This document shows, piece after piece, positions 1,189 through 55,188 of a stretch of DNA of 64,000 nucleotides (its first letter is position 1; every line of letters starts with the position of its first letter). The stretch comes from Intoshia linei (lineage: Eukaryota > Animalia > Orthonectida). The notes under the pieces are model-generated. The model was given only the letters and a program-made list of their open reading frames with translations. It had not been told where the DNA came from and ran no database searches. Location of the stretch: positions 6,013 through 70,012 of the forward strand of contig LWCA01000035.1 of the NCBI GenBank assembly GCA_001642005.1. The letters are read 5' to 3'. Made by a program: the position numbers and the translations under genes.

Positions 1189-2787
1189 GAAATCTTTACC
1201 TACTTAATGTGGTGGATTCTGATTTTATATTCAACAATGAAGCTAAATTATACAAGAGAGGAGTATTTATTCCTGGTTTACAAAAAGAAATTTTTACTTG
1301 TTCTAGTATATTGATACAAAAGGGACAAACTGATAAGACAAAACCGACCATAATGTATTCTTCAAAAAACATTTATAATTTAGGGGACAACGCAAAGTTA
1401 TATTGTGTTTTTACAGGATAGTAATACATTTTTGATATATTTTTAATTTCATTTTAGTCCAAAAGTAGATACACATTGGCAAAGTTTACTTGTTAACAAT
1501 AAAATGCCAGCAAAATTTTCTTCTGAAAATGCTTACCTTTTAATTTATAATGTACAATTAAGCGACCAAGGGACGTACAGATGCACTGGACAAAACTCGG
1601 AAGGAGAAACAGAAATTGACGTTGAGCTTATTGTTACAGAAAGGCCATATTTTATGACCCCTCTAAAAATCGTATATGTAGCAGTTGGTGAAACCGCTCG
1701 TTTTAAATGTAATGTTTATCCATGGGAGAATTTGAAAATTGTGTGGTATGTTAATGGAACACCTGTAGAAAGTGATGATAGAAGAATCGAAAATTCCAAC
1801 ATATTTAATCAACAAACGCATCCACAATTGAAAGGACAAAATATTCAATGTAACGCATCAAATGAGTATGGCTACGTATACGGTTCAACTTTTTTGAAAG
1901 TTTTGGATCTAACAAAAATTTTAAATGGACCAATTAACAAAATAATCGGTGAACCAGGTGCATATAATTTAACTTGTAGTGCTACATCTGATGAATCGGA
2001 AACTTTAAATTACGAATGGAAGAAACAATTGCAAGAAGGTCACGCTTTTGAAATCAAATCTACGGGAATTTACAGCATTTTCACAAATAAAACATCCACG
2101 CTGACCATTAACTCTGATACTTTGGATGAGATTTTAGGCGTTTACACATGTCGTGCTTTCACAGACTACTCTGATGCTACCAGTCAAGCCACAATATCTA
2201 AAGGCCCAGAAGTGGATAAAAGTAAATTTATTAAAATTATATAAATATCTTATTTAGTCGTGAGCCAATTGGCAATATCTTGGATGTGGATAGTATTCCC
2301 GTTAATTTTGATATTGGTACTAGTTGTTTTGATGGTTATGGCTATTTTGTATTACCAACGTAGAGGAAGTACGTATAATGGTATGCTTATTTAAGTTTCT
2401 ATTTACTAATTAAATTTAGTCGACAAGAAGGAGAGAGCAACAGGAAATGACCCAGAAAAGGAAATTGCTGATAGTGGTTTTCATGATTACAGAAGGGTGT
2501 AATTTAAAATTAAAATGTATATTAAATTAAAAATGCAATTTAGAGAAAACCCTCCTGTTGGTGGAAGTATTATATCAATACGAAAAAATATTTCCATTTG
2601 TAGTTCTGATGGTAAAGATGACGATTTTGATAAAATGGGCGATGAATCGGGCCTAGATCCAAATAAATTTAACGAAGATGGCTCCTTTACAGACCAATAT
2701 AACGAAACATATTCTTCCAACCGGAAACTAAAAGTAGATGGAAATAGTTCCAAACATTCACTAGGCGATAAAAATACTCAAGTTTGA
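1189..2787 (+). CDS. L1CAM/neuroglian-family Ig cell-adhesion receptor, 5' partial, no FN3 repeats
   Basis: Exons 1189-1420, 1458-2221, 2258-2380, 2420-2498 and 2544-2787 are joined by 36-45 nt GT-AG introns. It has Ig motifs (GNLYLLNV, DQGTYRC, GVYTC), a TM segment WMWIVFPLILILVLVVLMVMAILYY, and an L1-type tail (RRGSTYNVDKKE...DPE...FHDY...FNEDGSFTDQY) ending in TQV. Confidence 0.85.
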
Positions 2788-26918: not shown

Positions 26919-29900
26919 ATGAGTTCATCGAATCGACGCGATAGATCTTTATCGTTAGACGAGGCAGTACATTGCGTAGATTTGCTAGACGAATACGTAT
27001 ATGAAGAAAATACAATGTTGGCAGACAACATGTCAAATTTACCGATTCACTATATATACGACGTAGATTGCAATTTTGAAGATAAAAACGCATATGTATC
27101 AACCATGTCCAAAATTTTGGAAGAATTATCTTTAAGTGAAAAATTAAATCAATGTCAACAAGAATATGACGAACTGGCTGCAATAATATACCAATGGCGT
27201 CCAATTTGTCGTTCTCTACCTTCCACAGTAGACATGACTCGAGAAATGGATGAATCACTGTGTAAAACAATCATAGAAATCTACACACCACATATTCAGC
27301 AATTATATAGATATAAAAAATTTACTATAATGGCCACCGAATTATTTGTTGTAGAAATTTCAACTTTTTTGAAAAGGGATAAAAAGGTATTTGTATCCAG
27401 CTATTTTGCAACAACCTTCATCAAATACATGGCCATGCTGATAACGTTAGATTACATCAAAATGTCGACTACGAGCATAAAAAACGACTTTTCAGCGTAT
27501 AAACGCGCTTATCAATCTATGAATATTGCCAACAGCAAGGTAGGATCGGAAGAATCATTCATAATGTCTCTGTATTTAGCAAAAAATAACAACATTAGAG
27601 AAGATTTGATTAAATCATTGAAAGACGTCGAGGGGCACCAGGATTTGTTTTCGACAATCATTGCAATTTGCACTAATCGCTTGGAAAAGGAAGAGTATTT
27701 ATTAATTTCTGAAAAGCACATGTACATGATGGTAATTGGCTGGTGTCTTTACATTATTGACAGCCCTACCTGGAACATTTATAAATTGGAATATAAAAAA
27801 GAATACAATTTGACTAAAATTGATAAACTATTCAAAAAAACTCAAGTAATTTCCATTTATGTAGATATCCCTTTGTCAACTTTCGACATTATTAAAGAAA
27901 CTCATAACTATGATTCGCTCAAATGGCCAAATTGTAATTCTTCCAACACTAGCGCCCAATCTGTCATACTTTTGGAAATTTGTAATTTAAGAAATATATA
28001 CTGTGACTACATAGAAAGAATAGCCATTTTTAATAATTCAATTATTACTAGCCAAAAAAATTTTTATTTCCATAAAACTGAAAGTGAAAAAATATATAAT
28101 TTTGCCATTAATGCTCTAAAAATTATGACTAAATTAAAAATTACCTACATTGAAGCATATCTGTGGAAAATGCTCAATCCTACAGATCACCATCAAAACG
28201 AAAATTGTCCTGCTGATGCACAACACTATGAAAGGGCTACACGTTTCAATTATACTTATCAAGAGAAATCCACCATTGTTGAAATTGTTGCAATGATTAA
28301 GGGTCTTCAAAATACACTTTCAAGGATAGAAAGTATTATTATGGATGGCATAAAACGGCATATTTATATCATTTCGCAATTATTTTTACAAAGAAACTTG
28401 ACGGACACGATAAAACGCGCGGTTAAATCAAAAAAAGATGTTTTAAAGTATTTTTTTATATCTGCCCACAATGCATGCACTGATCCAAAAAATAACAATG
28501 ACGAATCTGGTAGAGAGGATGATTTTCAAAGTAATTTATGTGACAGGGATTGTACTTTATCAAACACCCAGTTATACATACTGCGTACTTTAATGGAAGT
28601 AATAGTGGATGACCGAAACCCGAAAAAGAACATGAGAAAATATTTAGATTCTGCATCAATTGGTATAATTGAATCTTTCTTAAAACAATCCAAACACTGG
28701 GGTGATTTATTAAATTTTTCAAAACTTTTGAGGGTTTGTGGAGATTTATCTTTGCCTTGGTACAGAGAATTTTTTTTACAAGCCACGGCAACTAAAACTA
28801 AACAATTTCCCATTGAAATGTCGATTCCGTGGATTATGATTGATCACGTCCTTGAGTCCAAAGACAGTTCACTCTTGGAATACTGCTTGTATTCACTTGA
28901 AGTATACAACGACGTTGCCAATTTAGCTCTCAACCAACTCAGGTGCTCCTATTTATATGACGAAATAGAGGCAGAATTTAATATTTGCTTTACCCTTTTT
29001 ATTACCAAACTAAGCGAACAAATGTTTAGATACTATAAACATTGGGCATCCAGTATTATCTTGTGCAAAAAATTTAGATCCGAGTGTGCGAAACGGGGAA
29101 CAACAATTCCCTTTCCTCGTCATAGTAGATTTGATAAACTACTAAAATTAGACAACATGTGCTTACTTGGCAGACACGTCAGTTTGAAATATTTGATATC
29201 CCTACAAATTAATGCTGCATTTCTAAAATCGTTGGACACTGCAATCAGTCGGTATGAATCGTCCCCTTTAACTAGGATTATTGAACTGGAAAACCTAATT
29301 GAAGCAAACCTTCTTACACACAAAATAATTTCAAAATGCGTAAACTTGACAAGCTTTGAAAATCTTTTGAGTGAAGCTGATCAAAATGTAGTCTTGCCGT
29401 ATGGCAGAATTTTGTCTCATACTTTTATGGAAATATCCGAAGACCTCATCCCAAAATACTGTTATAATGAATCAACCAACCGTTTTGTAAAAGGAAAAAT
29501 AGATTTCTGCAAACCAACCGTACGCGAAAAATGTGCTAATGTTTCAAATCAGTATATATGGGGAACCAAAGCTCTCACAATTTCGTATAATGGAATATTT
29601 GGTTTATTTTCAGAATTTGTTGGTGTCGATGTTTTTCAGAGTATTGTTGTATTGTTAAAATACAGTGGCATTGCCGTACTTGTAGAACAACTGCTCTGTT
29701 TTTGTCAAGATATAATTCAGTTGAAATTGGCTGATATTTTAAAAGACATGTCAAAAGTAATGCCATTAACAGTTAAAATGCCTTATGACAATTATGGATC
29801 AAGTGGAATATTTACTCATTACTTATCTAGATTGAAAAACTTTTCTAGATTTCCCAATATGAAAACGGTCGTGTTGCAAATATTTAGAGAACTGGGAAAT

Positions 29901-30772
29901 GCCATTATAGTTTGTTCCATACTGGAACAATGTCTATCCCAAATCGAAATAAGCTCTCTTTATCAAGCTGGTCCATTTATCAACAACTTACCAAAATGTG
30001 TCATTAGAGCTGTACATGATATTCGCCAAGACGGTTATTATGAAAAAAGCAATAGTCGTGTCAAAGTAAAAAACCTCAAAAACATTGTTTCAACTTTCAA
30101 TTCCATGAATATCATGAACATTATAAAAAATTCCCAATATGAGGAATATGCAAAAATAGCAGATGAAATACAGACTTTTATGAATGTAAAATTGTACTGT
30201 GGCCTTTCACTCAATATTAGGTTTCTGTTAAAATTAAAAGGATGTGTAGAAGAATCGTTTGTATCGGGTAGTGGTATGTATTCGACAGGTATCTTGAGTG
30301 CAGCTGATTGCAACCAATTTCACAGGTACTGGAGTGCCATTCAATTTATATTTTGTATGCCACCACGAGATGATGAAACAAAAATTGAGTTTATTTTTTG
30401 ATTTCATAAATAATTTTACTTAGAGAATTATTTGGAGTTGGGTTTCAATGGGCAGCCTGTACTATTATTCACCTTTTGGATCAACAGAACCGATTTAATG
30501 CAACTGATTTTTCGTACCATTTACTCAGCATATACAGTTCTGATAAAGAAATTAATGCTAACGTCGTAATTTAATTAATTAATTTTAATATTTACCTTTT
30601 TTAGAATCTAGGGAAAATGTGCGCAAGAATAAAGAGGTTTAAAAAAATTAATGACATTATATTCAATCGCCTATCAACTTATAAAATCCAAAGTTATAAT
30701 GAAGAAACTGATTCAAAAAAGTTTAAAGTGAGAACTTTTCCTGCAAAAACCTGGCCATTAAACATTAATTAA
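26919..30772 (+). CDS. CYFIP: Cytoplasmic FMR1-interacting protein (Sra-1, WAVE complex)
   Basis: SIKNDFSAYKRA, CPADAQHYERATRFNY, WYREFFL, QFPIEMSIPWI and FHRYWSAIQF. Exons are 26919-30388, 30424-about 30565 and 30605-30772. Confidence 0.96.
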
Positions 30773-52575: not shown

Positions 52576-55188
52576 CTAAAAATTTCCGTATCCATAATGA
52601 TCGTGGTGATCAAGGTTGACATGAGGGACATGTGGATCAAATATTGCGTCGTTGTAGTAGTTTCCCAAATTATCTACGTGGTGTACTCCAGGATGATACT
52701 CTACAAAATGTTCTTCGTCGTAGAAATGTCGTGGGGCATGATTAATGTTCTCATAATCAGATTCATAATAATTTTTCTTATGATAAATGGGTGTATGTAT
52801 ATATTTATGCATCTCGTGTAAGTCTTTTTGGCTGTGATCAATATAATTGTGCTTTGTATATACTTCTGGATATAAATTATTAATGAAATGGTCCTGTCGT
52901 AAAAAATGGTCGTAATTGTGATGGTCAACGTGATGATTATGTAATAGATCATTGTGCAAATTATGATGGTGGTGGAAATCTTTATTGTCGTAAAGTCTAT
53001 CCACGTGAGAATGTACATGATCATGGTGATGCTTACCATAATTGTTTCTATCAGTATTATATTGAGAATGTGTATCATGAAACGTGCTGTCTTTTGAATA
53101 ATCATCAAAGCGATCTGAAATGTGGTCCATCTCTTGAGATTGAGAATCACTGTGCGTAGATGAAGGAGGGTACGAAACTCCCTCGAGTTCACCGAGATAA
53201 ACATTATCGTGATGGCCATGGTGTCCATGGTGACCATGATGGGCAACAAGTCCGTGATGACCATTGTGTCCGTGGTGGCCATTATGTCCGTGATGACCAT
53301 TATGTCCGTGGTGGCCATTGTGTCCGTGGTGGCCAATATGTCCGTGATGACCATTATGTCCGTGGTGGCCAATATGTCCGTGATGACCATTATGTCCGTG
53401 ATGACCATTATGTCCGTGGTGGCCAATATGTCTGTGATGACCATTATGTCCGTGGTGGACATTGTGTCCGTGATGCCCAAGATGTCCGTGATGACCATTG
53501 TGTCCGTGATGCCCATTATGTTCAAAATCATGGTGGTCCGTATGTCTTCTGTAACTATGTGGAAGTACATGAGTGTCAGGAATAAATTCATCAGCCACAA
53601 TTTCATGAGTGTCAACGGAATATGCATGACGAGCCAACACATCATCATGATCGTTTTCCTCTTTGGGAATATTTTCGTTAGTAGCATTGCCTAAAAATCA
53701 ATTAATTTAAATTTATATTTTATCGGTCAACATATATGTCTGTTCCAGTTTATTTTAATAATTAATTAAAGTCGAGTTTTAAAAATTTCATATTTCTATT
53801 ACAGTTTTTCGAGAGTGAAGTTTTATTGAAAATTTCATTTTCCGAAATTAAGTACTTAAAGATCAAAAACCCCAAATATCCTTTTTTTAAAAATCAAACG
53901 AGTCCTATAATTATAAAAAATACACAATTTGATAAAGATTTTAAAATTCATCAAAATTATAATAAATTTCAATTTCAAATTCGTATACCTTCACGGTCCA
54001 AACAATTGATTTTAAAAATATTAGTTATATACTGACAAATCAGTGGCCACCAAAATTTTTGACACACTACCGGATAAGATAAAACATCAGTGAATTAGAT
54101 GAAATTTTTTTTGTTTCCTCAATTATAATTAGTAACTTAACTAATTAATTGATTAACAAAACGGCAGATAATCTTTTTTAGTGTTACTCTGTTATAGTAA
54201 AAAAAAATCGCCCTATTTTACAAAAAATTTTTCTAAAATCACGTTAATTTAGTAAAATAGTCAATAGGTTGTAAAAGTTAAAAATTACCTCTAAATTCTT
54301 TTAATCTCTTACCCTCTAAAATAGTAGATTAAAAATAAGGAATGATTAAATACGTACCACAGCTTCCTCTAGATATTTTCAATCTGGAAATTGCAATTGA
54401 AACATCACTACCTACTGGAGCATAACCAGCAAATTGAATCTATAATTAAATTAAGTTAAAATAAATATTTAGTAAATCAAGTGCAATAAATTTTACTCAA
54501 AATTTAAATATTGAGATTGGATATTGAAAACAAACTGGGCTCTGTATCACAACTGATGCATTTTAAATATTTTTTTATACTAAAATTTTACACCTTACTA
54601 GACGAATGAAACTTTCAGTATAATAAACAATAAAAATTAATATAAATGAGTGATGGGCAAATGTTTACTATTGATTTATTTAAATTTTGATATATGTATG
54701 TTGTTTAGTAAATTGTTACCCAATCTTCCTTTTGTCTAAAAGAAATTGTAACTTGCGCTGGTTTCCATTTATTGGGGGTATCGTTGGTTGAAGACCATCT
54801 TTGTACTAATCTTTCACCCTTGACATAGTTTGAAAGGATCAAAGTGTTTCTTTCATCGCCTGTAAAATAATCAAAACTAACACAAATTTCAGAATCTACA
54901 TATCCGTAGATGAATTCCATTCTAAATAAATATGAAAATTTTTTATGACTATTTACATCGAGTCCGTTAATACAGTAAATGCATAGTCGGTCCTGCCATC
55001 GATTTCTTTTCCTTCTGAGGGGTGATAATATTCGGTTTTAGCGCGACATGAAAACAAATCGCTAAAGTCACAATTCAAAATATCTAATTTTAAAATGTGA
55101 ATTATAAATCTAATCAAATACCCTCCTCTGCATATAGTGACACAATAAATATAGAGAATATGAAACAGAAATAATTCATAATGTTCAT
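52576..55188 (-). CDS. Secreted MAM-domain protein with (Gly-His-X)n repeat and His-rich tail, 530 aa
   Basis: Exons 55188-55122, 55083-54957, 54921-54720, 54439-54358 and 53690-52576 splice in phase via GT-AG (1593 nt). Features: signal-like MNIMNYFCFIFSIFIVSLYA, MAM-like CDF..C, CVSFDY, W..W..A.V, IAIS..ISRGSC, then a His-rich region. Confidence 0.8.
53209..53514 (-). repeat. Coding tandem repeat, 9/18-nt unit encoding GHH-GHN/GHI
   Basis: 34 triplets built from GGACATAATGGTCATCAC / GGACACAATGGCCACCAC-like units. Confidence 0.95.

What the first reader, a model, noticed from the sequence alone, without database searches (positions are those of the whole stretch)
52576..55188. Secreted MAM domain fused to a (Gly-His-X)34 repeat and His/Tyr/Asp tail: candidate metal-crosslinked extracellular material protein
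Seen: the His-rich ORF is not standalone. Four upstream exons splice in phase to give signal peptide, compact MAM-like domain, acidic linker, 34 triplets (31 starting with Gly, no Pro; GHH-GHN-GHH-GHI), then a long His/Tyr/Asp-rich tail ending GYGNF. Established: Gly/His-rich proteins form Zn/Cu-crosslinked annelid jaws (Nereis Nvjp-1, Glycera), mussel byssal preCol ends and squid beak, and MAM domains mediate extracellular adhesion or oligomerisation. Inference: a self-assembling, pH- or metal-switchable cuticle, adhesive or metal-sequestering protein. I do not recognise this architecture from any described family. Strict Gly-X-X periodicity could form a PPII bundle or triple helix lined with imidazoles.
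Basis: partly seen in the sequence, partly recalled or inferred. Interest (0 to 1): 0.8.

Follow-up and report, generated by a model that had tools for sequence, protein, structure and literature searches.

The report
Secreted MAM-like, histidine-rich orthonectid protein
This is a real but unannotated gene of the parasite Intoshia linei, one of four lineage-specific paralogs that join a signal peptide and a compact MAM-like domain to a very histidine-rich region that probably binds metals and switches charge near pH 6.3; its function is untested.

Summary
On the minus strand at 55188-52576, GT-AG exons splice in phase. They give a signal peptide, a 133-residue four-cysteine MAM-like domain, an acidic linker, 17 GHHGH[N/I] hexapeptides (34 triplets, 31 Gly-first, no Pro) and a 210-residue His/Tyr/Asp tail. 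Exon 2 starts at 55083. A conserved 27-nt mini-exon (54315-54289) probably adds a basic KR linker, giving 6 exons and 539 aa.

The genome is Intoshia linei. Three paralogs (C1721, C2183+C952, C1518) have the same exon order and intron phases. Each joins a MAM-like domain to a His-rich exon, which strongly supports the fusion. C1721 is public as OAF69331.1, a hypothetical protein that UniRef names "MAM domain-containing protein". The window gene's tail matches no public protein.

A profile of the tail found no relative outside I. linei among 1.84 billion proteins. The tail is under purifying selection. Gly-X-X periodicity occurs only in this copy, so the collagen or triple-helix idea is weak.

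MAM assignment is probable, not proven: Pfam is sub-threshold and the fold is a generic jelly-roll. Metal- or pH-switched extracellular material is inference from composition. No expression or binding data exist. The joined protein was not searched.

The parts
55122..55188 (-). Exon 1: ATG plus a 22-codon hydrophobic leader (MNIMNYFCFIFSIFIVSLYAEE). It ends in phase 1 with donor GTATTT.
   Evidence: Maximum Kyte-Doolittle value over 10 residues is 3.06. All three paralogs have a matching leader exon followed by a phase-1 intron (37 and 40 nt in C1721 and C2183, longer in C1518). SignalP was not available.
54957..55083 (-). Exon 2: N-terminal part of the MAM-like domain (C-D-F...C motif, G-x-x-I-x-G-x-x-x-Y-A). 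It follows a 38-nt intron.
   Evidence: Only the acceptor at 55083 keeps the frame open. tblastn to the C1721 paralog gives E 3e-8. Both Cys are invariant in the 4-paralog alignment A6.
54720..54921 (-). Exon 3 (202 nt): core of the MAM-like domain (C-V-S-F-D-Y, two invariant Trp). It follows a 35-nt intron.
   Evidence: Pfam PF00629 MAM: E 0.0037, 17.6 bits, profile positions 71-126 of 158. Alignment A5 of 4 paralogs. The C1721 exon 3 is the same length, 202 nt.
54358..54439 (-). Exon 4: last strands of the MAM-like domain, ending G-S-C-G (the fourth conserved Cys). Phase 1.
   Evidence: Alignment A7.
54289..54315 (-). Probable 27-nt mini-exon that keeps the frame and encodes EGKRLKEFR. This is a basic linker with a dibasic KR, lying 42 nt after exon 4, with donor GTAATT.
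   Evidence: It is the first open AG..GT candidate after exon 4. The C1721 paralog has a 27-nt counterpart 41 nt after exon 4, used in the public model OAF69331.1 (ESQSLRNKR). C2183 has a 24-nt counterpart at 52 nt. 185 of 5000 shuffled introns give such a candidate. It is not proven without RNA data.
53515..53690 (-). Exon 5, first part: acidic linker with one N-glycosylation sequon (NAT).
53209..53514 (-). Exon 5, repeat: 17 hexapeptide units GHHGH[N/I] (18-bp tandem repeat), 51% His, no Pro.
   Evidence: TRF. Units listed. Triplet counts. Pfam Collagen PF01391 E 5.6e-14 comes from Gly periodicity only.
52576..53208 (-). Exon 5, tail: a 210-residue His/Tyr/Asp/Asn-rich domain conserved in three paralogs (53% and 36% identity), plus the stop codon at 52576-52578.
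   Evidence: Alignments A1 and A2. pN 0.27-0.43 against saturated pS of about 0.8. Exactly 3 loci in the genome. The only hit among 1.84 billion representative proteins is the I. linei paralog.

Best explanation
The locus is an intact, unannotated protein-coding gene of the orthonectid Intoshia linei. It has 5 exons, or more likely 6, and encodes about 530-539 aa. It belongs to a species- or lineage-specific family of four paralogs.

Shown:
- A hydrophobic leader exon.
- A compact (about 133 aa) four-cysteine beta-sandwich domain of MAM type.
- A short basic linker, then a long region with 18-27% His and about 10% Asp.
- In three of the four paralogs, a conserved tail of about 200 residues rich in His, Tyr, Asp and Asn. 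The tail is under purifying selection and has no detectable relative outside this species.

Inferred:
- The protein is secreted.
- The MAM-like domain anchors or oligomerises it at the cell surface or in the matrix.
- The His-rich part binds divalent metals (Zn, Cu, Ni) through imidazoles and reverses its net charge around pH 6.3.
- The protein could therefore be stored soluble at acidic pH and condense or crosslink at seawater pH. That is the logic of Nereis jaw Nvjp-1, mussel byssal His-rich domains and mefp-12. Candidate sites of action are the microvillar cuticle or an adhesive secretion.
- The dibasic site in the linker may allow the His-rich part to be cleaved from the MAM-like domain.

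The Gly-X-X periodicity of this copy is a by-product of the recently amplified GHHGHX unit, not a collagen-like helix.
For: Gene model:
- Canonical splice sites and an open frame.
- The same exon order and intron phases in C1721, C2183 and C1518.
- The public model of C1721 joins the MAM exons to the His exon.
- Introns of 35-42 nt fit the I. linei median of 57 bp (PMC6543705).

Organism: P0001 is OAF69331.1 from Intoshia linei. The genome is 41.6 Mb.

MAM-like domain:
- Pfam gives E 0.0037 on exon 3.
- Four Cys are invariant in the four paralogs.
- For the paralog, 22 of 30 top ESM Atlas feature hits are PF00629 clusters (score 0.94, 177-181 shared features), and the Atlas structure search gives TM 0.81 to an MAMDC2 cluster.
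- Foldseek ranks 1-4, 7 and 8 are MAM-containing chains: enteropeptidase, the neuropilin-1 MAM domain, LAST-MAM and meprin (E 0.0055-0.07).
- VIA gives Z 6.3-6.4 to meprin MAM at 16-18% identity.

His-rich part:
- Composition and charge curve.
- The GHHGH core is kept through 24 synonymous against 11 non-synonymous differences.
- The tail is constrained.

Analogues:
- Zn-binding His/Gly jaw proteins with signal peptides in Nereis (PMC13120676, PMC9465683).
- Zn- and pH-dependent assembly of His-rich mefp-12 (PMC13022425).
- A fifth secreted Gly/His-rich gene exists on C326.
Against: - There are no expression data, so no splice junction is confirmed by RNA.
- SignalP was not available. The window leader has no basic residue in its n-region.
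- MAM is below Pfam's cut-off, and the paralog P0001 has no Pfam hit at all.
- hhalign against the genome's own MAM domains gave nothing.
- The fold match does not separate MAM from carbohydrate-binding jelly-rolls; all are tied at Z 6-7.
- Metal binding, pH switching, localisation and any material role are inferred from composition and analogy alone.
- Orthonectids have no jaws, byssus or other known hard parts.
Confidence: 0.45

Rival explanations
1. The protein is a soluble secreted metal buffer or scavenger. The His-rich region sequesters or delivers Zn, Cu, Ni or haem in the parasite-host interface (the plasmodium inside the nemertean host) and does not build a material. This would resemble histidine-rich glycoprotein or Plasmodium HRP2.
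For: It has the same composition as in the best explanation. There is no C-terminal anchor and no hydrophobic segment after the leader. Five His-rich secreted genes in a 41.6-Mb, strongly reduced genome suggest an important physiological role.
Against: It does not explain why three paralogs conserve a Tyr-rich tail under purifying selection, or why all four copies keep a MAM-type adhesion or oligomerisation domain. No data exist on stage of expression.
Confidence: 0.2
2. The protein is a precursor. It is cut at the dibasic site of the mini-exon linker (GKR|L here, RNKR|S in C1721, HKR|S in C2183). Cleavage releases a free His-rich polypeptide that acts as a pH-dependent antimicrobial or host-modulating factor.
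For: Basic KR motifs recur at the same linker position in three paralogs. C1721 matches the furin consensus R-X-K-R (consensus recalled from established knowledge). His-rich peptides with pH-dependent antimicrobial action are known (review PMC5198042, listed).
Against: The mini-exon is unproven without RNA. The window motif is not a full furin consensus. The released part would be about 370 aa, far larger than known His-rich antimicrobial peptides. This reading is compatible with, rather than opposed to, the material hypothesis.
Confidence: 0.15
3. The 34 Gly-X-X triplets form a collagen-like triple helix or PPII bundle lined with imidazoles.
For: Pfam Collagen PF01391 gives E 5.6e-14 on exon 5. 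Genuine I. linei collagens have only about 4-5% Pro, so the absence of Pro is less damning in this genome.
Against: Three of the 34 Gly positions are V, R or A. The real unit is a hexapeptide DNA repeat. None of the three paralogs has Gly periodicity (0.10-0.19 against 0.71), so it is not a conserved property of the family. No trimerisation domain was recognised. A 102-residue Pro-free helix would be marginally stable (established collagen biophysics).
Confidence: 0.07
4. The joined model is an artefact. On this reading the MAM-like exons and the His-rich exon belong to two adjacent genes, or the locus is a decaying pseudogene.
For: No RNA evidence was available. The window gene is absent from the public protein set. 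An unspliced ORF from an upstream ATG (55279) also reads into exon 2.
Against: The same adjacency, order, strand and compatible phases recur in four divergent paralogs. The annotators independently joined them in C1721. All exons are open in a 26% GC genome. The tail is under purifying selection. No alternative leader exon was seen in the 667-nt intron.
Confidence: 0.05

Closest known systems
Intoshia linei A3Q56_02944 (OAF69331.1; UniProt A0A177B6W9, 'MAM domain-containing protein', uncharacterised)
   Same: It is a paralog in the same genome (contig C1721). It has the same exon structure and intron phases, the same four-Cys MAM-like domain, a mini-exon linker, a His-rich region and a conserved tail. 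Tail identity is 36%, and the tail profile scores E 8.8e-79.
   Different: It has no GHHGHX array and no Gly periodicity. It is 721 aa. The public model misses the leader exon and starts inside intron 1. The window gene's tail matches nothing else in the public protein set.
MAM domain (Pfam PF00629; meprin, RPTPmu, neuropilin, enteropeptidase)
   Same: It is extracellular and has four conserved Cys in the canonical positions. It shares the C-x-F...C, C-x-x-F-x-Y, W...W and A-I-x...C motifs. The fold is a jelly-roll beta-sandwich, and MAM-containing chains top the Foldseek list.
   Different: It is about 133 aa against about 160. The Pfam score is below the cut-off, and the paralog has no Pfam hit. 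It has no close relative among the seven other MAM loci of this genome.
Nereis jaw proteins Nvjp-1 / Nai11527 (Gly/His-rich, Zn-binding)
   Same: These are secreted, very His- and Gly-rich proteins from annelids, the group where orthonectids are now placed, and they occur as paralogous families (PMC13120676, PMC9465683, PMC12249979).
   Different: No sequence homology was shown, and the tail profile hit nothing outside I. linei. Jaw proteins have no MAM domain and are 29-36% Gly. Here Gly is 9% overall, and orthonectids have no jaws.
Mussel His-rich byssal proteins (preCol flanks; mefp-12 His-rich coiled coils)
   Same: The proposed logic is the same: acidic storage, then His-metal coordination and condensation at seawater pH. 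The low-confidence AF2 model puts long helices in the conserved His-rich tail of the paralog.
   Different: There is no homology, and helix confidence is only about 50 pLDDT. No DOPA or Zn data exist for Intoshia.
Collagen triple-helix repeat (PF01391)
   Same: Gly falls at every third residue over about 100 residues, and Pfam gives E 5.6e-14.
   Different: The Gly register is interrupted three times. There is no Pro. The periodicity is not conserved in the paralogs. It arises from an 18-bp tandem repeat.

Membership tests
MAM domain (PF00629) | Significant match to the family profile above the curated cut-off | tested here: inconclusive
   Exon 3 alone scores 17.6 bits, E 0.0037, covering positions 71-126 of 158; the cut-off is 26.4 bits. 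Exons 2 and 4 are too short to score. Paralog exons and the whole of P0001 give no hit. The joined window protein was not scanned because it has no reference. UniRef names the paralog a MAM domain-containing protein.
MAM domain (PF00629) | Four conserved cysteines in the canonical positions: two near the N-terminus, one in the C-x-x-F-x-Y motif and one at the C-terminal end (pattern recalled from established knowledge) | tested here: met
   All four Cys are invariant in the four paralogs (alignments A5-A7).
MAM domain (PF00629) | Jelly-roll beta-sandwich fold closest to solved MAM domains | tested here: inconclusive
   Tested on the paralog model only; residues 61-160 have pLDDT 54-86. Foldseek top hits are enteropeptidase, neuropilin-1 MAM, LAST-MAM and meprins, at E 0.0055-0.1 with none at or below 0.001. 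VIA gives Z 6.3-6.4 to meprin, tied with CBM29 and Cry domains at Z about 7.
MAM domain (PF00629) | Domain length of about 160-170 residues | tested here: not met
   133 residues from the first to the last Cys. The stretch between Cys2 and Cys3 is about 42 residues, which makes this a compact variant.
Collagen triple helix (PF01391) | Uninterrupted Gly at every third position | tested here: not met
   31 of 34 triplets start with Gly; the other three start with V, R and A.
Collagen triple helix (PF01391) | Imino-acid content in the X and Y positions | tested here: not met
   No Pro in the repeat. The genome's genuine collagens still have 4-5% Pro.
Collagen triple helix (PF01391) | Periodicity conserved among homologs | tested here: not met
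   The fraction of Gly with Gly at i+3 is 0.71 in the window copy and 0.10-0.19 in the paralogs.
Nvjp-1-like Gly/His-rich jaw proteins | Sequence homology to Nvjp-1 / Nai11527 | not tested
   No Nvjp-1 sequence was available by reference. The tail profile found no annelid protein, but the repeat region itself was not searched.
Nvjp-1-like Gly/His-rich jaw proteins | Zn binding and metal-dependent hardening | not testable with these tools
   This needs recombinant protein and metal analysis.
Intoshia MAM-like/His-rich family (defined here) | Leader exon, three MAM-like exons with intron phases 1, 2, 0, 1, and then a His-rich exon | tested here: met
   Found in the window gene and in C1721, C2183(+C952) and C1518.

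The most novel reading that the evidence does not exclude
Orthonectids carry a lineage-specific family of secreted proteins in which a miniaturised MAM domain tethers a histidine-loaded module that switches with pH and metal. On this reading the module builds or cures an extracellular material, either cuticle or a mating or infection adhesive. That would be jaw- or byssus-type His-metal chemistry in a microscopic, drastically reduced parasite, either inherited from annelid ancestors or evolved independently. It would also come with a new conserved His/Tyr tail domain of unknown fold.
Probability: 0.25. Interest if true: 0.7.

Novelty: new variant of a known kind. Interest (0 to 1): 0.45.

Why it matters
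If the inferred role is right, a 41.6-Mb genome that has lost much of the bilaterian toolkit still keeps at least five secreted His-rich genes. Four of them are fused to a MAM-like domain.

That would make Intoshia a minimal system for studying His-metal and pH-switch assembly of extracellular materials. It would also provide a new, compact building block: the GHHGHX array plus a conserved His/Tyr tail.

It bears on orthonectid-annelid affinity too, because annelid jaws use Gly/His proteins.

More modestly, it adds an unannotated gene. It joins two contigs (C2183 and C952) into one gene. It also corrects the public model of A3Q56_02944, which misses the leader exon.

Tried and rejected
- The exon 2 acceptor at 55061 breaks the frame and was rejected for 55083.
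- Word-indexed homology search with the tail found nothing at E <= 0.01.
- ESM Atlas on the window tail gave no usable hit.
- PDB sequence searches gave no MAM and no meaningful hit. Queries were exon 3, P0001, and profiles of exons 2 and 3 and of the tail.
- Pfam on the paralog exons and on the whole of P0001 gave nothing.
- hhalign of the exon-3 pair and of P0001 against an alignment of the genome's seven other MAM loci had probability around 1% or below. That alignment is itself only 15-22% identical, so the test was weak.
- Single-sequence AF2 of P0001 had pLDDT 33 and was unusable. A 12-row piecewise alignment raised only residues 61-160.
- The look-up of encoding contigs for P0001 had nothing on record.
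- Literature searches for the accession, and for Intoshia plus histidine-rich, found no papers.
- The weak own-genome hits of the repeat on C1771, C2865 and C315 are ordinary collagens, not relatives.
- I first took C952 for a MAM-less copy. That was rejected once C2183 proved to hold its MAM exons and to end in the 18 nt that follow the N in C952.
- dN/dS could not be computed because dS is saturated, so only pN against pS is given.
- The joined (spliced) protein was used only inside local scripts, for frame, composition and charge. It was not sent to Pfam, homology, Atlas or structure tools. Those searches were done exon by exon, by reference.
Full report
**What is there**

The window has 26% GC. 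It carries metazoan genes: a single-exon CYFIP at 26919-30401 and Ig-domain exons at 1504-2244. It is contig C2317 of a 41.6-Mb, 3520-contig assembly.

On the minus strand at 55188-52576 the sequence gives five GT..AG exons that join in one open frame of 530 codons:
- 55188-55122
- 55083-54957
- 54921-54720
- 54439-54358
- 53690-52576

The nearer AG at 55061 does not work for exon 2; only 55083 keeps the frame. The introns are 38, 35, 280 and 667 nt. Short introns are normal here: the median for I. linei is 57 bp (PMC6543705).

The product has these parts:
- a hydrophobic leader
- a 133-residue domain bounded by Cys
- an acidic linker
- 17 tandem hexapeptides GHHGH[N/I]. TRF gives an 18-bp unit and 15.1 copies. 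As triplets this is 34, of which 31 start with Gly, with no Pro and 52 His.
- a 210-residue His/Tyr/Asp/Asn-rich tail ending in GYGNF

His makes up 101 of 530 residues.

**Is the joined gene real?**

No RNA data were within reach, so I used paralogs.

A six-frame search of the same genome with exon 5 found two relatives of the His-rich exon: C952 (48% identity, E 4e-63) and C1721 (34%).

Upstream of the C1721 exon, on the same strand and in the same order, lie homologs of window exons 2, 3 and 4 (E 3e-8, 1e-5 and 0.005), plus a leader exon. The five-exon model I built there has the same intron phases (1, 2, 0, 1) and an exon 3 of exactly 202 nt.

A profile of exon 3 then found two more loci, C2183 and C1518. 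Both have a leader exon and exons 2-4 in the same phases.
- C2183 runs into a His-rich exon at the contig end. Its last 18 nt equal the 18 nt that follow the single N in C952. So C2183 and C952 are one gene, broken by the assembler inside the His repeats.
- C1518 has His-rich ORFs downstream (24% His) but lacks the conserved tail.

Four divergent paralogs thus share one architecture: leader, MAM-like domain, His-rich exon.

A profile of the three tails, scored against 1.84 billion representative proteins, hit exactly one protein (E 8.8e-79). That protein is OAF69331.1, A3Q56_02944 of Intoshia linei, which UniRef names 'MAM domain-containing protein'. This hit does three things:
- It fixes the organism.
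- It shows that independent annotators also joined the MAM exons to the His exon in the C1721 paralog.
- It shows that no protein holding the window gene's tail or the C952 tail is in the public set. This agrees with the blank.

**A probable sixth exon**

The public C1721 model contains a 27-nt mini-exon (ESQSLRNKR) that lies 41 nt after exon 4.
- In the window, the first open AG..GT candidate after exon 4 is also 27 nt long and 42 nt downstream. It encodes EGKRLKEFR and has donor GTAATT (54315-54289).
- C2183 has a 24-nt counterpart at 52 nt.
- Only 185 of 5000 shuffled introns offer such a candidate.

I therefore think the window gene has six exons and encodes 539 aa. The linker is basic and carries a dibasic KR. 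In C1721 it reads RNKR|S, which is a furin-type motif. Processing at this site is possible but is pure inference.

**Is the N-terminal domain a MAM domain?**

In favour:
- Window exon 3 alone matches PF00629 at E 0.0037 (17.6 bits, profile positions 71-126). It is the only Pfam family reported for that exon at E up to 10, but it is below the 26.4-bit cut-off.
- All four canonical Cys and both Trp are invariant in the four paralogs.
- For residues 8-140 of the paralog P0001, 22 of the 30 nearest ESM Atlas clusters are PF00629 clusters (score 0.94). The best Atlas structural match is an MAMDC2 cluster (TM 0.81).
- An AF2 model of P0001 built on a shallow piecewise alignment reached pLDDT 54-86 over residues 61-160. 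Foldseek then ranked enteropeptidase, the neuropilin-1 MAM domain, LAST-MAM and the meprins first (E 0.0055-0.07).

Against, or neutral:
- Pfam finds nothing in P0001 or in the other paralog exons.
- hhalign against the genome's other MAM loci is blank.
- PDB sequence profiles are blank.
- VIA Z-scores for meprin (6.3-6.4) are tied with carbohydrate-binding modules and Cry-toxin domains at about 7.

My reading is that this is a compact, fast-evolving MAM-type jelly-roll. That is probable, at about 0.8, but not proven. The joined window protein was not scanned, because it has no reference. All searches were done exon by exon.

**The His-rich part**

All four paralogs have 18-27% His, about 10% Asp, 9-14% Asn and 6-10% Tyr.

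Only the window copy has Gly periodicity: the fraction of Gly with Gly at i+3 is 0.71 here and 0.10-0.19 in the others. The periodicity comes from an amplified 18-bp unit.

Within that array, 24 codons differ from the consensus synonymously and 11 non-synonymously. Seven of the 11 fall at the variable sixth position. So the GHHGH core is selected at the protein level.

The Pfam Collagen hit (E 5.6e-14) reflects periodicity only. Three Gly positions are V, R or A, there is no Pro, and the paralogs lack the feature. One caution: genuine I. linei collagens also have only 4-5% Pro.

The tail is a real domain:
- It is 53% and 36% identical between paralogs.
- pN is 0.27-0.43 against a saturated pS of about 0.8.
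- There are exactly three copies in the genome.
- It has no relative elsewhere, no PDB hit and no Atlas hit.
- The low-confidence model suggests long helices in it.

The calculated net charge of the mature protein goes from about +43 at pH 5.5 to about -36 at pH 8.1, with a pI near 6.3.

**Mechanism**

Shown: the gene structure, the family, the composition and the sequence constraint.

Inferred:
- secretion (leader exons in all four paralogs; no SignalP)
- MAM-mediated tethering or oligomerisation (general knowledge of MAM domains)
- imidazole-metal binding and a charge switch near pH 6.3

By analogy with Nereis jaw proteins (PMC13120676, PMC9465683) and with mussel mefp-12 and byssal His domains (PMC13022425), this could drive condensation or crosslinking when the protein leaves acidic granules for seawater. 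Orthonectids do have a microvillar cuticle (PMC6543705), but no hard parts are known.

The rivals are a soluble metal buffer, a processed precursor, a collagen-like helix and an artefactual joining. They are scored in their own section.

**Novelty and verdict**

No paper mentions these proteins. One paralog exists only as an uncharacterised database entry.

The architecture (mini-MAM, His-rich region, orphan tail) is a new variant among secreted His-rich proteins, and the window gene is unannotated. It is a sound and moderately interesting finding. Its functional claims remain untested.

**Left out**

I ran no search of the joined spliced protein in any database or structure tool. SignalP and RNA-seq were not available.

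Noticed in passing
G000 contig C326, locus L034 about 4271-3629 (minus strand): This is a fifth His-rich gene. It has a leader exon (MNLSIVFATFFLLFVTSQ), a phase-1 intron of about 29 nt, and then a Gly/His-rich exon of about 190 aa (29% His, 22% Gly, GHHG-type units with Gly-X-X spacing) ending in ...YHGHF. It has no MAM exons, because a TRM1-like gene ends about 500 nt upstream. It is probably the subject of the other first-reader note on this genome.
   Followed up: partly
G000 C2183:16969 (contig end, L023/L026) and C952:5773 (single N, L018): This is an assembly break inside His-coding repeats. The last 18 nt of C2183 equal the 18 nt right after the N in C952. The two contigs therefore carry the two halves of one MAM-like/His-rich gene. 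The 3.9 kb placed upstream of the N in C952 is probably mis-scaffolded.
   Followed up: partly
L017 7330-7238 (C1721, public gene A3Q56_02944): The public protein model starts at an ATG inside intron 1 (MLILILDLF...). It misses a canonical leader exon (MKLIIFSIVIFIITTKAN) that splices in phase 1 across a 37-nt intron, as in the window gene.
   Followed up: yes
L018 5963-5811 and 4149-3949 (C952, minus strand): Two copies of the same ORF-bearing repeat (...RVSHFFK.L.IF.TNGAHPVYFGAKINNLEYYI...) flank the His-rich exon in direct orientation. This may be a dispersed repeat or mobile element.
   Followed up: no
G000 C1771:88766-96654, C2865:33641-33853, C315:14149-14325 (L005-L009, L027): These are genuine Gly-X-Y collagen exons of I. 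linei, and they contain only about 4-5% Pro. That is presumably a consequence of the 26% GC genome. The C315 collagen lies next to a VWA-like ORF.
   Followed up: partly
window 26919-30401 (+) and 1504-2244 (+): A CYFIP/Sra-1 homolog is encoded in a single 1160-codon exon (PF05994, E 3.8e-213). An exon with two Ig (I-set) domains lies at the start of the window. Neither is linked to the finding.
   Followed up: no
window 53160-53694 (+): Long antisense ORFs (141 and 161 aa) overlap the His repeat. They are by-products of the repeat's composition, not genes.
   Followed up: yes
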